The translations under genes were made by a program, and so were the position numbers. DNA of 63,994 nucleotides, counting the filler, from Octopus bimaculoides (Eukaryota): NCBI RefSeq assembly GCF_001194135.2. It is 4 parts of 4 records of this genome, joined end to end, with 100 filler letters (N's around TTAATTAATTAA, not from the genome) between each part and the next. Parts side by side here need not be neighbours in the genome. Positions count along the whole stretch, not along the records: positions 52,067 to 62,699 come from NC_068988.1; 3 more parts are not named here. One strand, 5' to 3'. Every line of letters starts with the position of its first letter. Position 1 is the first letter of the stretch. Positions 51,896 to 61,371 of the stretch are shown here, in pieces. A model generated the notes under the pieces. That model worked only from the letters and a program-made list of their open reading frames with translations, was not told the origin of the DNA and did not search any database.

Positions 51896-52134
51896 TAGTG
51901 CAAGTTGTCTAGTACATTTATAAAATTCTTATGGTGTCAACAATTTTTACATATATATATATATATNNNNNNNNNNNNNNNNNNNNNNNNNNNNNNNNNN
52001 NNNNNNNNNNTTAATTAATTAANNNNNNNNNNNNNNNNNNNNNNNNNNNNNNNNNNNNNNNNNNNNATATATATATATATAAATTCAAAGTAAACAGAAA
52101 ATGGAAAAATATTAATCAATAACAATTGACTTAC

Positions 52135-52267
52135 ATCAATTATTATTTATTAATTCAATACAAATAGACTGTATCCCATCTAACAGCTGTTTCTGCTTCC
52201 ATTGTTATAAGGTATTACTATTGATATTCTAAAAATTATATTCATCATATTAGGTAATAAATCCGAT
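52135..52267 (-). other. Candidate non-coding 5' UTR exon of the PARP6/8 gene (overlaps a Penelope-like hammerhead relic)
   Basis: Long pyrimidine tract plus ccag acceptor and perfect gtaagt donor; stops in all frames; another donor (ATG|gtatga) lies near 52367. No transcript evidence. Confidence 0.3.
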
Positions 52268-52294
52268 CTGGAACATGGAGTTTCATCAGAGTGA
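52177..52294 (-). ncRNA. Degenerate type-I hammerhead ribozyme motif (Penelope pLTR-like) with a long stem II
   Basis: cact-CTGATGA-aactccatgtt...aacaatggaagca-GAAA-CAGCTG-TT^agatg. Confidence 0.5.
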
Positions 52295-52775
52295 AGAAAA
52301 ATATATACATAAAAGAAAAGAAGAGCCTCGAAGGGAAAAAGAAAGGCTTAAAATGTTTGAATCATACCATTGTGCTTATGTGTCGCTTTAGGACGTTGAG
52401 TAAACGACTAAACTTAAAATAGTTATTGGTGGGTTATTTTTTCTATAGGTGTAATAGAGTGGATAGATAATAAAAAAAAGTAAAACTTAAGGAAAATTAC
52501 AATAACGAAATACGCCAATAAGTTTAGTCAAAGAGGGAGTGAGGGTGCCATAACGTTTTGAAGTAATCATAATAGTTCTTAATAATTATGTCTATAGTAC
52601 TAATTAATAGTTTTTATCGTAATAAAGTGTCCGACAATTAATTTCTGTAATTTACTTACATATCAGTAAGTAAATAATTGAAATTAATAGTCGGGCATTC
52701 AGACCATATTATTCAATTTAGCTATCGATTTTAAGACATTCGACTATGATTTCAAGCTGTGATTTGTGATTTAGG

Positions 52776-53048
52776 CAGTGCCGTCTTAAAGTATTGATAC
52801 ATGGGGTAGTTGCTCAGGGCCACCACAAGTCTTAGGGGCCCAATTATGACTTAAGAATGTATGTGGCTTGCTGTGAATAAATACTGTAGGGCCTTATGCA
52901 CTGATTTCTGGGACCCATAATGCTACGAAGATGGCGGGGCAAACCACAAGTCTTAGGAGCCCAATTATGATCTATGTATGTATGTGGCTCTGTTGGGCTC
53001 TGTGCACTGATTTTCTCTGGGGCCTATAATGCTGCTAAGAGGGCTATG
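52776..53048. mobile_element. hAT-type MITE with internal tandem duplication of its 3' half
   Basis: TIR cagtgccgtctta / taagagggctatg; 8-bp TSD GATTTAGG / GATTTCGG; about 110-bp unit duplicated at 52821 and 52944. Confidence 0.75.
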
Positions 53049-53110
53049 GATTTCGGTGCTACTTTTCGAGGCTTGCATTTTAAGTAGTTGAAGCGTTGTT
53101 ACTCATGAAG

Positions 53111-53388
53111 TCAAAAGTCTGCATGCAAGGGAGTAAATTTTAAAATCTGGTTTAAAACTGTACCTTGATTTGCATTTCCAACTGCTATACCAGTAACTTG
53201 AACTTCACAGATGTGGAGAAACTCTGTAAAACTTGATACACGCTGGATCATAACATAACGAGCGATTGCAGTACATTTTACAGAATGGATGTTCCCACTA
53301 GCTTTTTCTGATACTTCTGAACACTCGGAGTTGGTGTTTAAATAATGAGCACGGAAAGCGAACACTTTGTAATATCTTGAAAATTCAA
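53111..53388 (-). CDS. F-type lectin exon 3 (FEFSRYYKVF...ECSEVSEKASGNIHSVKCTAIARYVMIQRVSSFTEFLHICEVQVTG...ADF*)
   Basis: Acceptor attttcattatatatcttcag; phase matches exon 2; ARYV-x-I and LxICEVQV match the F-type C-terminal GRYV..LxLCEVEV; stop at 53111-53113 gives a 178-aa precursor. Confidence 0.85.
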
Positions 53389-53411
53389 CTGAAGATATAT
53401 AATGAAAATAA

Positions 53412-53455
<44 letters not shown>

Positions 53456-54304
53456 CATACAAGGTTGGCTAAAATTCAGCCGAGAGTAAATCAAAATTAC
53501 ATAAATACAATCGGTAATTATGTATTGATTTGAATGGAAAAAAGTGTCGTCCAAGAAGGACTTCAGTTTGAATAATTTTCATGTTGTTTCATATTTAGAT
53601 GCTTATATTAAATTCATTCAGTAGTTAAACATAAATATATCTTGGAATTAAATAGTTTTGATTTACTGTCAGGTGACTTATGACCAACGTTGTATGTATG
53701 TATGTATGTATGTATGTATATAATTAGTAATCTGCGACTGATACGTTTCCTATCGAGTAAACAACGGAGCAACATAGTTAACTCCCTAAGTCTAAAACAT
53801 TTCAATCTATTTCTTCTTTCTTTTCCTCCCACATTTTCTATTTCATTCTTTCATTCTGTTCCATTTTATTTTTTTCTCCCAATCTCTTACAACCGCTTAC
53901 CCTTTTTATGTTCTTTCTTTTGCCTGAACAAGCAGAACTAACATCCTTTTTATGTGCTTATTCGTCAAGAGAGAAACCGAATAACTACCCGTTTTACAGT
54001 GTTAAAAATTGAAATTTAAAAATCAAGAAAAGAACAAAAGCTTAAAGTGAAATTGAATTTTCGAAAAACAAAACAATGCTTAAAGAGAAACTTAGAAAAG
54101 CAAAAGGTTTGCGTTGGCGTGATGGATGTTCGGTGATAGAGTTGGCAGTTTCTACTGAGTAAACCGTTTTGTTTAGAAAAATACCCACACAATGATGATA
54201 CATACATACATACATACATACATAAATACATACATACATACACACACACATACATACATACATACATATATACATACATACATACATACATACATACATA
54301 CATA

Positions 54305-55150
54305 CATACAAAGACTACGCATGGGCATGTTGCCCGGAAGCTTGAAAAAGACAGTAGAATTGACACGAAGTGCAACTTCTCTTGGACACAAGATCACTAC
54401 ATCATATCACACTTTGAAGGGTATGCGTTTGCAATCCAGGAACAGGAGATTGCCACAAAATACCTGGTGAACAAAAGAGACAATGACGCTCTTGTAATCC
54501 CAAGGTGCAACCGCATGTGTAGGTTGTGTCATGTTTCTGTGGAAGACATCACGCATGTGATTAGCAACTGTCCTAAAATGCCGTCACGGTACTACCTCCC
54601 TATGCGGCACGATGTTGTCGCTAAAATAATTTACAATGCCATCCGCAAGAAAGACTGTCTTGAAATAAACTTTAAAAATTCCTCTGATATGGAATACATT
54701 CATAAACACCAACTCAAGGAATACTGGTGGAATATTCCCATCGAAACTTCTGTCAAATATAAACATAACAGACTGGATATTGTCGTTTGGGACAGAAGGA
54801 CAAAGGTATGTACCGTCATAGAGTTCAGCTGCCCTGCAGCTATAAATATCTCTTTAAAAAAATCAAAGGAAAAGAGGATATCTATGGGCAACTGCTTCGA
54901 AACCTCCAGTTTCTATATCCAGACTATGAATTCATATTCATACCAATAATAATTGTTAGTAAATGCTTAAAGGAGAATCTGGCTAATTCGTGCATTAAAG
55001 TGCAATCCGTGAGTAGAACAGTAAAACATGCAAGACTTTTCTTAAGTTCCAAATGTGAATTTGTCTATGTTAGCTACATCCCGAAGATTGAGCCTTGTCT
55101 TTTTGTTGGAAACCGGCTCCCTCCTCAGTGGAAGAATTATAATAATTAAA
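54305..55150 (+). mobile_element. R4/Dong-type LINE 3' fragment (CCHC knuckle plus restriction-like endonuclease)
   Basis: FAIQEQEIATKYL, CRLCHVSVEDITHVISNC, YLPMRHDVVAK, HNRLDIVVWD..VIEFSCP. Confidence 0.9.
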
Positions 55151-55269
55151 AAATAGAAGAGACATACATGCATACATACATACATACATACATACATACA
55201 TACATACATACATACATACATGCATACATACATACACACACACACACATATACATACATACATACATAC

Positions 55270-55930
55270 CGATGAGACATGACGTTGTAGCCAGTACACT
55301 GTATAATGAGATCTGTCGGAAGGATAACCCCGAGAGCAATGAAATAAGACCCTTTTTTGTGATAGAGGCCATTCCCACTCATATTAAGAGTGCTGGTGGA
55401 ATGTCCCAGTGAAAACCTCAATAAAATGTAATCATAATAAACCTGATATAGTAATTTGTGATAGAAAAGAGGAGCAGTGTACAGTTGTGGAAATCAGTTG
55501 CCCAGCAGATGTTAACATAAAGTTAAAGATCAGCAAAATAAAATACCTACGCTGAACTGTTGGGAGATCTATAGTTACTCTATCCAGATTACAAGTTCAG
55601 GTTTATGCCTGCAATTACTGGGGCACTGGGAATGTAATGCACTGCCTAAACATCAAACTTGGGAAATTAGGCTTCTCAAAACCAGAAAGGAGGAACGTAA
55701 TTCGAAGTCTACAGAACCAAGCCATCACTGGAACTTTAAAAATTTATGCGCATATCTAGACACACAACTATGTGCATGAGAATACAACATAAAACAAAAC
55801 ATACAAATCTGCACATGCATGATTCAAAATACTGCACATATATACACATACATGCAAAAATACCCTGTTCATTTTGTTGAAATTCCAATGAAGGAGCTTC
55901 GGATCTAGGTTAGAAACCGGCTCTTTCTCC
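55270..55930 (+). mobile_element. Second, shorter R4/Dong-type 3' fragment in tandem with the previous copy
   Basis: Starts at MRHDVVA; contains HNKPDIVI.D..VVEISCPADVN and ITGTLKI-like end; separated from the first copy by (CATA)n. Confidence 0.75.
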
Positions 55931-56023
55931 ATTATCTTCAAATAAAACTGAATAATATCTCTCTCTCACACACACATACACACACACAAACATACACACA
56001 TATATAACTTGTCTATCTATCTG

Positions 56024-56078
<55 letters not shown>

Positions 56079-56097
56079 GTGTGCGTGTATGTGTGTG

Positions 56098-56162
<65 letters not shown>

Positions 56163-56280
56163 GGATGGATACGAAAAAGAGAGAGATAATGACTAAGATT
56201 GAGAGGCAGAGAAAAAGATACAGAAAGAATGAAAGAAAAAGACAAGAGAGAATGAGAGAGTGGGAACGAGAGAGAGAGAG

Positions 56281-56369
<89 letters not shown>

Positions 56370-56409
56370 CAGTAAAGTAGATTTAGAAAAAGATGGAGGA
56401 TTTACTTAC

Positions 56410-56616
56410 AGCAATAGTTTTCAAAATATACAGTAACTAAATCAATTTTATGAGCGACTCTCAAGTCAACAATCCACCACGGATTCATCATGTAATTCGT
56501 TCGGCTGCATGGTCCGTTCCGATTCGTCTTGCCATCTATAGCAAGCTGGGCACCATACTTATCGGCCACACTACTTTGTTTTACTGGTTTTCCTCGTGCA
56601 ATGTTGTTGCCTGCAG
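56410..56616 (-). CDS. F-type lectin (fucolectin/FTP domain) exon 2 (AAGNNIARGKPVKQSSVADKYGAQLAIDGKTNRNGPCSRTNYMMNPWWIVDLRVAHKIDLVTVYFENYC)
   Basis: Long polypyrimidine acceptor, donor T|gtaagt, 207 nt, phase 1-1; motifs NIAxGKP..QSS, AIDG, C-x-x-T and NPWW-x-VDL are diagnostic of F-type lectin domains. Missed by the ORF track because it has no long Met-initiated ORF. Confidence 0.9.
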
Positions 56617-56667
56617 CTGGAAAAAAGAAACAAAAATATTGAGAAAAGTTTCCTATACTCTAAAACA

Positions 56668-57020
56668 CATCATCATCATCATCATCATCAAGATCCCTTG
56701 TCAGATTCAGCCAGCCGTTGGGGTCCCACTCTAGATGCTTTCATAGTCAGTCGTCACAACTGGTCTCTGATCTGTGTCATGCTTAGCAGCTTCACTGTGT
56801 TCTGACCTGTCCAGTCCTTGATGTTATCAAGCCAAGATTTTCTCTGTCTTATCTGCCTCACTTTCATCTTCCCTCATCTGTGTCATGAAGAATGATTTTG
56901 GACAGTGAGTTGTGGAAGGATACATGACCGTGCTAGAGAAGCTTCCGTCATTTTTACCTATGCAAGGAGTGGTTCCTGTCTGCCACCTTATTTTTGACTT
57001 ACTGTCTTGTAAGGCTGCTA
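56668..57020 (-). mobile_element. RTE-type LINE 3' fragment with (GAT)n tail, in lectin intron 1
   Basis: RKLL*HGHV..HNSLSKIILH..EG, decayed GR motif; tail is (CAT)n on the plus strand. Confidence 0.65.
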
Positions 57021-57759
57021 GCTTTGTGATCCGCCCCAGTCTAATAGATCAAGGTCATCTTATCCAAAATATAGTCGTAGTTGTTATATAATCATAGATA
57101 AGTCCTTATCGAGCAGACCTAAATCACCTTATCTGAAAGATGTTTGTGCAGTTATTGTTTACTTCCACTCATAGTTCAGCCCTGATCGAGCAAATCTAGA
57201 GCCAAAGACGATATGTCAGTCTATTTTAGTGTTATCTAGACACAAATTATCTAATGTGACCCCCGCTTTTCAAAAAGACAGCAGAGTGTGCTTTGAGAAA
57301 AATTCATCTGTTATTTCTAGTAGGTCTTTCTATTAGGTAAAGGGTTCTTTGTCGGCTGAGAAATTTAGAAAGACAGATGGATGGAAAACGATGTGTAGAT
57401 ACAAAAATATGTATGAATACACACACACACACACACACATACGCACACGCACACGCACGCACGCACATACATATTTATATGTGTGTGTATCAATATATTT
57501 ATATATATTTGTATGCGTGTGAGTAAACGTATGTACGTATGTGTGTATGTATGTATGTATGTATGTATGTATGTATGTATGTATGTATGTGTTGATCTAC
57601 ATCTTTTTCTGGGTATGACTTTAAACTGCATCGAGTAGTGGGCCCTTTGTTCGTAAGCTCCAGTGTTTTGAGGTGTGTGGAACCGCATCTTAGCTACCAT
57701 TTGTTCTCAGATCTACTCAGATCTGGACTTGTGGCTCTTGTCAGGATCCCAGTTATGGA

Positions 57760-58291
57760 CTAATTAGTAAGTTAGTCGGGAAAACAGAGCTCGTAATCCG
57801 GGAAGTGAGGGGAACCCGTCTTGAGGAAAGGGAACCCTGATTCCAAACCTCCGGCCGTACTCAACCACGAGAAAGGCTTCGGGAGTAAACCCTATGGAAA
57901 AATCGCGAGTCGGAGCTCTTGGGAAAGTTCGACGTTGACTACCACCTCGTTCTGCGACGATGCTGGTGCCAAACTGCAAGGGGCATGCTGTTGCTTTGGA
58001 GTCATCAGTGCTTTGGAGTCATCAGTGCTTTGGAGTCATCAGTACTTTGGAGTCATCAGTGGGTATACGCTGCATGGGCAACAGCCTGTCCTCCATACCA
58101 TACTATCAAACACCCTATGCTGGAAAGATAAAAAACATTACTACTCAAAGAGCACTGGAACAGCCTACGAGTGCGGCTAGTGTGGCCGAGACTGCTATTC
58201 GTGCATCGGACCGTTCAATCACAGACAACGTTGTTCAACGGCAGACAACTAGGACCTTAAGCCTTAGCCATTAATGACAGATGCGGACCTC

Positions 58292-58300
<9 letters not shown>
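57760..58300 (+). mobile_element. Internally deleted RTE element: 5' UTR joined to the C2H2 3' end, with a 17-bp VNTR
   Basis: RTE-like 5' UTR (gaggaaagggaaccctgattccaaacctccg..gggagtaaaccctatggaaaaatc); 3' ECG*CGRDCYSCIGPFNHRQRC; (tgctttggagtcatcag)x4 at 57992-58059. Confidence 0.6.
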
Positions 58301-58359
<59 letters not shown>

Positions 58360-58376
58360 AGACAGACAGACAAATG

Positions 58377-58429
<53 letters not shown>

Positions 58430-58686
58430 GGCATGTTGACAGGTATGTGTTCTCACTGTGCACAATAACTTATAGATTATCGACATGAACGCTGTCTCAG
58501 TACTTCGGTGAATCAAGCAATAATTTAGTACAATAAAGTACATGAAAGCAGCAACTACATTTAAGATAATCAACGAAGCATAAAGTCAAAATAGAAAAAA
58601 AGTAAATTAATTGTACACAGAAAAAAGGAAGCATTTTTAACAGCGACGACGACGATGACAAAGGTGATTCCAAATTCTACCCTTAC

Positions 58687-58738
58687 CAATACAGCCTTGG
58701 ACCAAGACTACAAGAAGGAATAAAACACGCAGCATCAT
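58687..58738 (-). CDS. F-type lectin gene exon 1, signal peptide (MMLRVLFLLVVLVQGCI)
   Basis: Basic residue plus hydrophobic core typical of a signal peptide; donor G|gtaagg, phase 1, in frame with exon 2. Confidence 0.75.
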
Positions 58739-59069
58739 TCTTTATAGGCTGTTCTTTCTACCATAGAAATATTCCAAAATGACTTCAGCTTTTGTTAAGA
58801 CATGTCTTCATTTATAATCATCATCAATCGAAGATCAATAAGGTTGTTATAATATTGATGTTAAAGACCATTATGTCAATACATCTATGTAACCATCCAC
58901 CCATCCATCCATCCATCCATCTATCGCTCGGCTTCTAAACACACACACACACACACACACGCACACACACACACACACACGCACACACACGCACACACAC
59001 ACACAAAATATACATATATATGTATATACAAGTTCATATTTACAGAAGTGTGTATATATATATATATTT

Positions 59070-59100
<31 letters not shown>

Positions 59101-59679
59101 CATATATGTATGCATATGTGTATGTGTATATATATGTATATATATGTGTGTATATATATTTATGTATGTGTGTATATATATGTATANNNNNNNNNNNNNN
59201 NNNNNNNNNNNNNNNNNNNNNNNNNNNNNNNNNNNNNNNNNNNNNNNNNNNNNNNNNNNNNNNNNNNNNNNNNNNNNNNNNNNNNNNNNNNNNNNNNNNN
59301 NNNNNNNNNNNNNNNNNNNNNNNNNNNNNNNNNNNNNNNNNNNNNNNNNNNNNNNNNNNNNNNNNNNNNNNNNNNNNNNNNNNNNNNNNNNNNNNNNNNN
59401 NNNNNNNNNNNNNNNNNNNNNNNNNNNNNNNNNNNNNNNNNNNNNNNNNNNNNNATATATATAAAATACACACACACACACAAGTTTTGAACTATCAACA
59501 CTGTCGGAATCTAGACTAATACCGAAATTCTTCAAGTGCAGGAAATCCTGATTTCACGACGGTAAAACTAGGATTATATTTGTACACGCATACATACCCA
59601 ATACATACGCACATACTTATGTACGTAGATGATGACGACAGTGATGATGATGGCTCTCCATTCGTGACCAAGGACGACC

Positions 59680-60130
59680 ATCAATGACAACTAAGAGAAA
59701 TGTGCACTCAGACAAATTTATACTTTACACTTTTCCTCTATGCGGCAGAAAATTGGACAAGGTTGCTATCTTCTTCTCGTTTATCGTGTACAATGGTACA
59801 CAGTAAACGAGAAGAAGATAGCAACCTTTGGGATAGAGATTTTTCACAGGTTAGGCAGAATAAGCTGGAAAGACGGTAACAAAAGTTACAGCTGTAGAGA
59901 AGCTGAAAGTCCAAGAAAGAACTTATTGGGGGAGAATCAAGGCCACAAAGCTATCGTGCCACGACCAACTGGCAGGAAGTGTGAAGGGGTAAAGAGCAAG
60001 TGGTCGTTAAAGACGTTTGCGGACTGGCATCAAAGAATGAACTGGAAATAAGAGCGTGGCGGACTGTAGCATGCAGTGGAACGCAGAGAGAACTGGAGTA
60101 TTGGCAAGTCGACCACCTAATTGGTGGCTG
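59680..60130 (+). mobile_element. Decayed RTE-type LINE RT C-terminal fragment
   Basis: LYAAE, NEKKIATFGIEIFHRLGRISWKD. Confidence 0.55.
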
Positions 60131-60884: not shown

Positions 60885-61371
60885 GAGTGTATGTATATAT
60901 GTATGTATGTATATATGTTTGTATGTATATATGTGTGTGTATATATGTGTATGTGTGTGTGTATATATACACACATATATATATAAAACAAATAACTAGC
61001 ACTCCGTCGCTTTTGACGACAAGGGTTCCAGTTGATCCAATCGACGGAACAGCCTGTTCATGAAATTAACATACAAGTGGCTGAGCACACCACTGACACG
61101 CGTGCCCTTAACGTAGTTCTCAGGGAGATTCAGCGTGACACAGAGTGTGCCATGGCTGGCTCTTTGATACTACTCATTTTTGTAAGTTGAGTGGGCTGGA
61201 GCAACGTGAAATAAAGTGTCTTGCTGAAGGACACAACGCACCGATGGGAATCGAACTCGTAACCTTACGATCGTGAGTGAATACCCCCAACCGCTAAGCC
61301 AGGCGCCTTCCCCTACCCCACACGTACGTAGTGTGTATGTATGTGAGTGCATGCGTGTGTATATCTACTTA

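What the first reader, a model, noticed from the sequence alone, without database searches (positions are those of the whole stretch)
53111..58738. Secreted F-type lectin with a completely rewritten, charge-reversed fucose-binding motif
Seen: three in-phase exons build a 178-aa precursor (signal peptide plus one F-type domain). Established: canonical F-type lectins such as Anguilla anguilla agglutinin use H-x26-R-x-D-x4-R/K plus a vicinal Cys-Cys disulfide to bind L-fucose. Here exactly the same spacing reads R-x26-E-x-Y-x4-S(R): His to Arg, Arg to Glu, Asp to Tyr. The vicinal CC is reduced to one unpaired Cys, while the Ca-site (AIDG) and the two structural disulfides (GPC/HIC, SEC/VKC) are kept. 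Inference: the fold is conserved but the ligand has changed (non-fucose glycan or protein, possibly Cys-linked dimers), making it a candidate cephalopod immune, mucus or adhesion lectin. The six-frame track misses it.
Basis: partly seen in the sequence, partly recalled or inferred. Interest (0 to 1): 0.72.

Follow-up and report, generated by a model that had tools for sequence, protein, structure and literature searches.

The report
Octopus F-type lectin gene, fucose site lost

Summary
The three minus-strand exons exist with GT-AG borders, all in phase 1. They encode a signal peptide plus an F-type lectin domain (Pfam PF22633 4.4e-13; bass FBP32 1e-15; eel agglutinin 2.7e-10). Every fucose-motif residue is replaced: H52→R56, R79→E83, D81→Y85, CC→CF, R86→F89. 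The CDR2 loop has also lost 3 residues, including the aromatic pair that holds the fucose methyl.

The model is wrong at its 3' end. The collinear O. sinensis and O. vulgaris loci splice at CAAG|GT (last exon base 53164) to a fourth exon. That exon encodes a 75-aa, 7-Cys domain and should lie about 0.5 kb beyond the piece edge.

The pocket is not a stable new motif. The O. sinensis/vulgaris orthologues read Q or R, D, S/G and have no Cys. Pocket loops change at 11 of 21 residues against 17 of 122 elsewhere. Overall dN/dS is 0.75-0.85. Even so, reading frame, splice sites and the promoter/exon-1 block (97%) are preserved.

About 4% of related F-type domains also lack all four motif residues, and oyster bindin isoforms and Drosophila CG9095 are published precedents. 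This is a new member of a known kind, of modest interest.

The parts
58634..58944 (-). Most conserved block of the locus: putative core promoter (TATAAA at 58816-58811, about 73 nt upstream of the ATG), 5' UTR, exon 1 and the start of intron 1
   Evidence: 311 bp at 97.1% identity to O. sinensis, against a locus mean of 87%. 138/140 nt are identical in O. vulgaris. Alignment. The promoter role of the TATA box is inferred.
58687..58738 (-). Exon 1: start codon and signal peptide (MMLRVLFLLVVLVQGCI + 1 nt), phase-1 donor G|GTAAGG
   Evidence: 51/52 nt identical in O. sinensis and O. vulgaris (C16→Y). Hydrophobic core, mean Kyte-Doolittle 2.4-3.9 over residues 1-18.
56924..56951 (-). ATG-containing stretch inside intron 1 (MTEASLARS + T|GT) that NCBI's O. 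sinensis model uses as first exon in place of the signal-peptide exon
   Evidence: tblastn of P0001 residues 1-9 and alignment. It lacks a signal peptide. By my reading of the sequence it lies in what looks like a LINE 3' fragment; this was not tested.
56410..56616 (-). [quoted passage not shown] It carries QSS, AIDGK (Ca motif), the shortened CDR2, GPC, R56 (H52 position), NPWW, and E83/Y85/C86 of CDR4.
   Evidence: The splice sites are identical in O. sinensis.
53164..53388 (-). Exon 3 (revised 3' end): C-terminal half of the domain (F87-Q161 + 1 nt), ending at the donor CAAG|GTACAG
   Evidence: O. sinensis and O. vulgaris splice here into exon 4. The metaclust fragment P0002 (100% identical) ends at ...GNANQ.
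53111..53163 (-).
   Evidence: A 10-nt indel in O. sinensis/vulgaris shifts this frame, so the tails differ (TVLNQILKFTPLHADF* against TVLSQILKFTPTICPCMQ...*). There is no AATAAA or ATTAAA until 52151.
52067..53163 (-). Intron 3, cut by the piece edge; exon 4 is expected about 0.5 kb beyond 52067
   Evidence: Window 52376-52068 aligns to L001 20586-20900, and O. sinensis exon 4 starts at L001 21428. No match to exon 4 lies inside the piece.

Best explanation
This is the 5' three-quarters of a real, single-copy-looking Octopus gene. NCBI calls its O. sinensis orthologue 'fucolectin-6-like'.

The encoded protein consists of a cleavable signal peptide, one F-type lectin domain (FTLD), and, in the orthologues, a C-terminal 75-aa, 7-Cys domain. 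That last domain is encoded by a fourth exon lying just beyond the piece edge.

The FTLD keeps the jelly-roll core, two structural disulfides and part of the Ca site. The canonical fucose site, however, is dismantled:
- the basic triad and Asp are replaced (R56, E83, Y85, F89);
- the vicinal disulfide is gone;
- CDR4 is one residue shorter;
- CDR2 has lost the aromatic pair that cradles the fucose methyl.

The protein therefore almost certainly does not bind L-fucose in the canonical way (inferred). The loops that ring the former pocket are the fastest-changing part of the protein between congeners, while the reading frame, splice sites and promoter/exon 1 are preserved.

My best reading is a secreted, fast-evolving recognition or adhesion module. 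Specificity (glycan or protein) would be set by the variable top loops, and the Cys-rich tail would serve anchoring or oligomerisation. The gene structure and the loss of the motif are shown. The ligand and the biological role are inferred.
For: Exons and splice sites.
FTLD homology.
F-type fold of the orthologue: pLDDT 85-95 over the domain, with top Foldseek hits 2j22, 3lei, 3cqo and 1k12.
Residue mapping onto AAA: read against Vasta 2017.
CDR2 length: 7 residues between DG and Cys, against 10 in 226 of 276 relatives.
Orthologous, collinear loci with a fourth exon and intact 235-aa ORFs.
Exon 1/promoter block at 97%.
Pocket loops: 11/21 residues changed against 17/122 elsewhere, Fisher 2.4e-4.
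Frame preservation: about 5 indels are expected in exons 2-3 at the intronic rate (11.8/kb), but only one, in frame, is seen; P(no frameshift) is about 0.017 and P(no stop) 0.12.
Against: No transcript evidence could be obtained.

dN/dS over the domain is 0.75-0.85 and not significantly below 1. Exon nucleotide identity (90.4%) is about the same as the noncoding identity (89.4%).

In the pocket loops dS is as high as dN (0.32 against 0.31, from only 12 synonymous sites). The fast change there could therefore be relaxed constraint or a local mutation or recombination hotspot rather than positive selection.

Exon 4 could not be seen in this genome because the piece ends first.
Confidence: 0.65

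Rival explanations
1. The lectin domain is decaying. The gene, or at least its FTLD, is under relaxed constraint after losing sugar binding, and it is on its way to becoming a pseudogene or a mere spacer.
For: dN/dS is 0.75-0.85 and not distinguishable from 1. The exons are no more conserved than the introns. Pocket residues are not conserved between congeners. Ca-site ligands and one salt bridge are degraded.
Against: The ORF and all splice sites are intact in three genomes. There is a single in-frame indel where about 5 indels are expected, and no stops; joint probability under neutrality is roughly 0.002. The promoter/exon 1 block is strongly conserved. The core strands, the structural cysteines and the D64-R131 salt-bridge equivalents are kept.
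Confidence: 0.22
2. One reading: a 178-aa protein of signal peptide plus FTLD that ends at TGA 53113-53111, through intron retention or an alternative 3' end.
For: The frame stays open for 17 codons past the donor. The first 12 of these codons are nearly identical in O. sinensis.
Against: That similarity equals the intronic background. A 10-nt indel changes the tail in the orthologues. The donor G|GTACAG is conserved and is used in the orthologue models. There is no poly(A) signal for about 960 nt.
Confidence: 0.08
3. The domain still binds fucose or a related 6-deoxy sugar through substitute residues, such as R56 in place of His and R91 in place of R86.
For: R56 is basic and occupies the H52 position. 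R91 lies two residues after the R86 position.
Against: R79→E, D81→Y, loss of the CC disulfide and loss of the CDR2 aromatic pair remove most of the described contacts. O. sinensis has Q at the H52 position and D at the R79 position.
Confidence: 0.05

Closest known systems
Anguilla anguilla agglutinin (AAA, PDB 1K12) and striped bass FBP32 (3CQO): canonical F-type lectins
   Same: About 140-aa F-type jelly-roll domain, with QSS, h2DG and NPWW.VDL signatures. The C50-C146 and C108-C124 disulfide equivalents and the D64-R131 salt-bridge equivalents are present. Sequence E-values are 2.7e-10 and 1e-15. The fold match of the orthologue model has TM 0.71 (target-normalised) to AAA and 0.54 (query-normalised) to the two-domain FBP32, rmsd 2.4-2.6 Å.
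   Different: The H52/R79/D81/R86 motif is entirely replaced and the C82-C83 disulfide is lost. CDR1 is 4 residues shorter, CDR2 3 shorter and without F45/Y46, and CDR4 1 shorter. Ser49→Pro at the Ca site, and the R41-E149 salt bridge is lost. An extra C-terminal Cys-rich domain is present in the orthologues.
Crassostrea gigas sperm bindin FTLD isoforms that lack the basic triad (Vasta et al. 2017, PMC5712786, Fig. 5B)
   Same: A molluscan FTLD with the His-Arg-Arg triad replaced by other residues. Variation is concentrated around the former fucose pocket. An intron splits the FTLD, and microsatellites flank the exons.
   Different: Bindins have 1-5 tandem FTLDs and documented positive selection and sperm expression. 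Here there is a single FTLD plus an unrelated Cys-rich tail, selection is unresolved (omega about 1 in the pocket), and expression is unknown. Whether the intron position is the same was not tested.
Drosophila CG9095 / furrowed FTLD
   Same: An FTLD whose basic-triad residues are replaced so that canonical hydrogen bonding to fucose is unlikely. The domain is embedded in a multidomain extracellular protein.
   Different: The fly proteins are large transmembrane proteins with CCP and C-type lectin domains, and only two triad residues are replaced. The octopus protein is small and secreted, and all motif positions are replaced.
NCBI 'fucolectin-6-like' [Octopus sinensis] (P0001) and 'fucolectin-like' [Octopus vulgaris] (P0003)
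   Same: Orthologues at a collinear locus, with 79-82% amino-acid identity over the FTLD, the same splice sites and the same loss of the motif.
   Different: Both database models miss the conserved signal-peptide exon, and P0003 also skips exon 3. Their pocket residues differ from the window's (Q/R, D, S/G, no Cys, one residue fewer).

Membership tests
F-type lectin domain (FTLD) fold family | Significant match to FTLD / F5_F8 type C sequence profiles | tested here: met
   PF22633 scores 50.1 bits (cut-off 27.8) and PF00754 30.5 bits (cut-off 28.2). The best PDB sequence hits are FBP32, AAA, lectinolysin and SpX.
F-type lectin domain (FTLD) fold family | F-type beta-jelly-roll fold | tested here: met
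   Tested on the 79%-identical orthologue only. The AF2 domain has pLDDT 85-95. The top Foldseek hits are all F-type lectin structures, TM 0.71-0.81 for the single-domain targets.
F-type lectin domain (FTLD) fold family | Structural disulfides equivalent to AAA C50-C146 and C108-C124 | tested here: met
   C54/C147 and C107/C124 align to these positions. They are conserved in all three Octopus sequences.
Canonical (fucose-binding) F-type lectins | Fucose motif H-X(24-26)-R-X-D-X4-(R/K) | tested here: not met
   The window has R56, E83, Y85 and F89 (or S90 if ungapped). Among 504 related domains, H is present in 57%, R in 90% and D in 83%; all four positions are kept in 214 domains and none in 23.
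Canonical (fucose-binding) F-type lectins | Vicinal Cys-Cys disulfide stacking on the fucose ring | tested here: not met
   The window has C86-F87. The O. sinensis/vulgaris orthologues have no Cys here.
Canonical (fucose-binding) F-type lectins | CDR2 of conserved length with aromatic residues forming the pocket for the fucose 5-methyl | tested here: not met
   There are 7 residues (KTNRNGP, no aromatic) between DG and Cys. Of 276 relatives, 226 have 10 residues, and 203 of those carry an aromatic. The feature itself is described.
Canonical (fucose-binding) F-type lectins | Ca-binding motif h2DGx plus the Ser49 and Glu147 ligands | tested here: inconclusive
   AIDG, D45 and E148 are present, but x = Lys and Ser49→Pro53 (alignment). 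Backbone ligands could still serve.
Canonical (fucose-binding) F-type lectins | Measured binding of L-fucose or fucosylated glycans | not testable with these tools
   This needs recombinant protein and a glycan array or ITC.
PAN/apple domain (considered for the orthologues' C-terminal 75 aa) | Match to PAN profiles or the PAN fold | tested here: not met
   No Pfam hit at E<10, no PDB sequence hit and no homologues. The AF2 model has pLDDT 54 and no Foldseek match below E=0.2. The domain lies outside the window piece.
Oyster-bindin-like gamete recognition FTLs | Positive selection on residues around the fucose pocket | tested here: inconclusive
   In the pocket loops dN is 0.31, against 0.079 elsewhere and about 0.11 in introns. 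However, the local dS is 0.32, measured on only 12 sites.
Oyster-bindin-like gamete recognition FTLs | Sperm/acrosome expression | not testable with these tools
   No expression data were available.

The most novel reading that the evidence does not exclude
An Octopus-restricted secreted protein in which the F-type lectin scaffold has been re-purposed. The former fucose pocket loops (CDR1, CDR2, CDR4) would be under diversifying selection for a new, species-specific ligand, working as a gamete-recognition or immune-recognition molecule in the way oyster bindin does. Intron 2 sits exactly inside CDR4 next to microsatellites and could favour recombination-driven diversification.
Probability: 0.2. 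Interest if true: 0.5.

Novelty: new member of a known kind. Interest (0 to 1): 0.25.

Why it matters
The finding adds a cephalopod example to the known set of F-type lectin domains that keep the fold but have lost the fucose site. If the fast change of the pocket loops proves to be adaptive, the gene would be a compact system for studying how a lectin scaffold acquires a new ligand. As it stands it is an ordinary divergent family member of unknown function.

Tried and rejected
The orthologue P0001 was used instead.
2. The word-index homologue search found only 3 proteins. The exhaustive search was needed.
3. Exon 4 was looked for inside the piece by tblastn and is absent.
4. The C-terminal domain looked PAN/apple-like by eye. 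Pfam, PDB sequence search, homologue search, local phmmer, AF2 and Foldseek all gave nothing, so the idea was dropped.
5. The look-up of encoding contigs on the 100%-identical fragment P0002, intended to reach this species' exon 4, found nothing on record.
6. tRNA and Rfam scans of the piece were empty.
7. Literature searches for cephalopod F-type lectins or fucolectins found nothing specific.
8. Twenty of the top representatives were named. None is a cephalopod, so no paralogue was found. The other 130 were not checked.
9. Clear positive selection in the pocket loops was considered but not claimed, because the local dS is equally high.


Full report
**1. What is in the sequence**

- exon 1, 58738-58687 (52 nt, ATG...G|GTAAGG);
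- exon 2, 56616-56410 (207 nt, ttccag|CTGCAG...TGCT|GTAAGT);
- exon 3, from 53388 (cttcag|TTGAAT...).

All introns are phase 1.

The product is an F-type lectin domain well beyond chance. Pfam PF22633 scores 4.4e-13 and PF00754 4.5e-7, both above their curated cut-offs. The best solved-structure relatives by sequence are striped bass FBP32 (1e-15), eel agglutinin AAA (2.7e-10), lectinolysin and the pneumococcal fucolectin-related protein.

**2. The motif**

The HMMER alignment to AAA reproduces AAA's published numbering. I read it against Vasta et al. 2017 (PMC5712786).

Fucose site:
- H52→R56, R79→E83, D81→Y85, C82→C86, C83→F87.
- G84 is deleted, and R86→F89.
- A profile alignment of 504 related domains gives the same register.
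- R56 and E83 are separated by 26 residues, as H52 and R79 are in AAA.

- CDR1 is 4 residues shorter.
- CDR2 has a 3-residue deletion that removes F45/Y46/H47. These include the aromatic residues that form the pocket for the fucose 5-methyl. Only 7 residues (KTNRNGP, none aromatic) lie between DG and the Cys, whereas 226 of 276 relatives have exactly 10 and 203 of those carry an aromatic.

Ca site: D38 and E147 are kept (D45, E148). The bidentate Ser49 is Pro53, the 'x' of h2DGx is Lys, and the R41-E149 salt bridge is lost (T48, Q150).

Kept: the C50-C146 and C108-C124 disulfide equivalents and the D64-R131 pair.

'Charge reversal' applies to one position only.

**3. The gene model is incomplete**

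The word-index search returned three proteins:
- O. sinensis 'fucolectin-6-like' (P0001, 227 aa, 79% identical);
- an O. vulgaris model (P0003);
- a 100%-identical fragment (P0002) that ends at ...GNANQ.

P0001 continues after ...GNANQG with 75 residues containing 7 Cys.

The O. sinensis locus (L001) is collinear with the whole piece, flanks and introns included. Noncoding mismatch is 10.6% and indels run at 11.8 per kb. It is therefore the orthologous locus of a related Octopus species.

In L001, exon 3 ends at the same CAAG|GTACAG as the window (last exon base 53164). Exon 4 lies at L001 21428-21653. The end of the piece (52067) corresponds to about L001 20900, so this genome's exon 4 should lie about 0.5 kb beyond the edge. 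Nothing like it is inside the piece.

A 10-nt indel gives the orthologues a different read-through tail.

**4. The first exon is right, and the public models are wrong**

Exon 1 is 51/52 nt identical in O. sinensis and O. vulgaris. It sits in the longest conserved block of the locus: 58944-58634, 311 bp at 97.1% against a mean of 87%. That block includes a TATAAA at 58816-58811.

NCBI's O. sinensis model instead starts at an ATG inside intron 1 (window 56951-56924), and the O. vulgaris model starts 22 kb upstream and skips exon 3. When the conserved exon 1 is used, both orthologues give intact 235-aa ORFs: signal peptide, FTLD, Cys-rich tail.

**5. Fold**

The FTLD has pLDDT 85-95. Its best Foldseek matches are all F-type lectin structures: SpX-3 2j22, lectinolysin 3lei/4gwi, FBP32 3cqo and AAA 1k12. 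Target-normalised TM is 0.71-0.81 for the single-domain structures; for the two-domain FBP32 the query-normalised TM is 0.54.

The C-terminal domain could not be assigned. There was no Pfam hit, no PDB hit and no homologue, and the single-sequence model (pLDDT 54) had no fold match. My first impression of a PAN/apple domain is therefore unsupported.

**6. Evolution**

Nei-Gojobori estimates over the FTLD:

| Comparison | dN/dS | Note |
|---|---|---|
| Window vs O. sinensis | 0.85 | dN 0.109, dS 0.128 |
| Window vs O. vulgaris | 0.75 | |
| O. sinensis vs O. vulgaris | 0.83 | 3 nonsynonymous, 1 synonymous change |

None of these is significantly below 1. Exon identity (90.4%) equals noncoding identity.

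The changes are not spread evenly. The loops that ring the former pocket (CDR1, CDR2 to the H52 position, CDR4; 21 codons, defined a priori from AAA) changed at 11 residues. The remaining 122 codons changed at 17 (Fisher P = 2.4e-4). In the loops dN is 0.31, against 0.079 elsewhere and about 0.11 in introns. The local dS is also 0.32, on only 12 synonymous sites.

The 'new motif' itself differs between congeners. The H52 position is R in the window and O. vulgaris and Q in O. sinensis. The orthologues read L-DGSY where the window has FENYCF. They have one residue fewer and no Cys.

Against simple decay:
- All splice sites and the frame are intact in three genomes.
- Exons 2-3 carry a single in-frame indel where about 5 are expected at the intronic rate. 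P(no frameshift) is about 0.017.
- There are no stops, with P = 0.12 by simulation.
- The promoter/exon 1 block is strongly conserved.

**7. How unusual it is**

An exhaustive HMMER search of 1.84 billion cluster representatives with P0001 found 1672 relatives (E ≤ 0.001). Outside Octopus the closest are about 40% identical or less. They are mostly multi-FTLD proteins of gastropods (Nucella, Gigantopelta, Haliotis), amphioxus, Xenopus and a hemichordate, plus metagenomic and bacterial proteins.

Among 504 domain instances from the top 150 proteins, 214 keep all four motif positions and 23 keep none. Two of those 23 are the octopus sequences themselves.

The literature already describes such deviants. 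In Drosophila CG9095, two triad residues are replaced. [quoted passage not shown] No paper in the searchable library deals with cephalopod F-type lectins.

**8. Verdict**

- The model is truncated by an intron read-through.
- The 'rewritten motif' is a variable, non-conserved set of residues rather than a new motif.
- The unpaired Cys is specific to this genome: the O. sinensis/vulgaris orthologues have no Cys at this position.

The most likely picture is a secreted, fast-evolving FTLD protein with a Cys-rich tail that no longer binds fucose canonically. Its variable top loops either recognise something else or are simply unconstrained. Expression data and a multi-species codon analysis would decide between these two. 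This is a new member of a known kind, of modest interest.

Noticed in passing
window 60998-61167 (also L001 19719-19889 and 23363-23533): A repeat of about 170 bp with a tRNA-like head (GGCGCCTGGCTTAGCGGTT...GGTTACGAGTTCGATTCCC). It has two extra copies at 86% identity elsewhere in the O. sinensis locus and is probably a tRNA-derived SINE. ARAGORN and Rfam do not call it.
   Followed up: partly
window 53450-55502 (intron 2): About 2.05 kb here corresponds to only about 0.5 kb in O. sinensis (L001 11988-12481). The extra DNA carries, antisense to the gene, a 160-aa ORF (54467-54949, + strand) with a weak zf-RVT match (E=0.01). It also contains two (ATAC/ACAT)n arrays (54198-54310 and 55162-55269). 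It looks like a lineage-specific retroelement fragment.
   Followed up: partly
window 56700-57010 (intron 1), minus strand: By eye this stretch translates like the degenerate C-terminal tail of a LINE ORF2 (...RKRGRQRKSWLDNIKDWTGQ-like) and ends in (GAT)n. Its internal ATG (56951) is the start codon of NCBI's O. sinensis gene model, which probably explains why that model lacks the signal peptide.
   Followed up: partly
window 59759-59828: A near-perfect inverted repeat (33-nt arms, 94% complementary, 4-nt loop) about 1 kb upstream of exon 1. It is also present at the orthologous place in O. sinensis (L001 6840-6905). Its function is unknown; it may be a transposon end or a hairpin.
   Followed up: partly
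window 56245-56368, 58296-58370, 56012-56171: A long (CT/AG)n array begins about 40 bp downstream of exon 2 (56245-56368) and another lies about 315 bp downstream of exon 1 in intron 1 (58296-58370). A pair of oppositely oriented (TCTA)/(TAGA) arrays lies in intron 2. The Vasta 2017 review notes GA/CT microsatellites flanking the FTLD exons of oyster bindin genes and links them to repeat shuffling. Whether the resemblance means anything was not tested.
   Followed up: no
window 57992-58061: A 17-bp minisatellite (TGCTTTGGAGTCATCAG x 4.1, 96% matches) in intron 1.
   Followed up: no
window 59193-59453: An assembly gap (a run of N) between microsatellite-rich flanks, about 0.5 kb upstream of the conserved promoter block.
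   Followed up: no
L001 20163-20900 against window 52068-52482: The end of the piece matches O. sinensis intron 3 in both orientations around L001 20586. This indicates an inverted duplication in O. sinensis. Its intron 3 is also about 7 kb longer than the aligned part of the window's intron.
   Followed up: no
P0142 (Haliotis cracherodii, residues 220-361): An abalone FTLD shares octopus-like strings outside the pocket (LAIVAFRKD against YKVFAFRAH; ARFVKIQR against ARYVMIQR; LTICEVQV against LHICEVQV). It has lost the His and the CC pair but keeps R..D....R. This hints at an older molluscan subfamily with a partly eroded motif.
   Followed up: no
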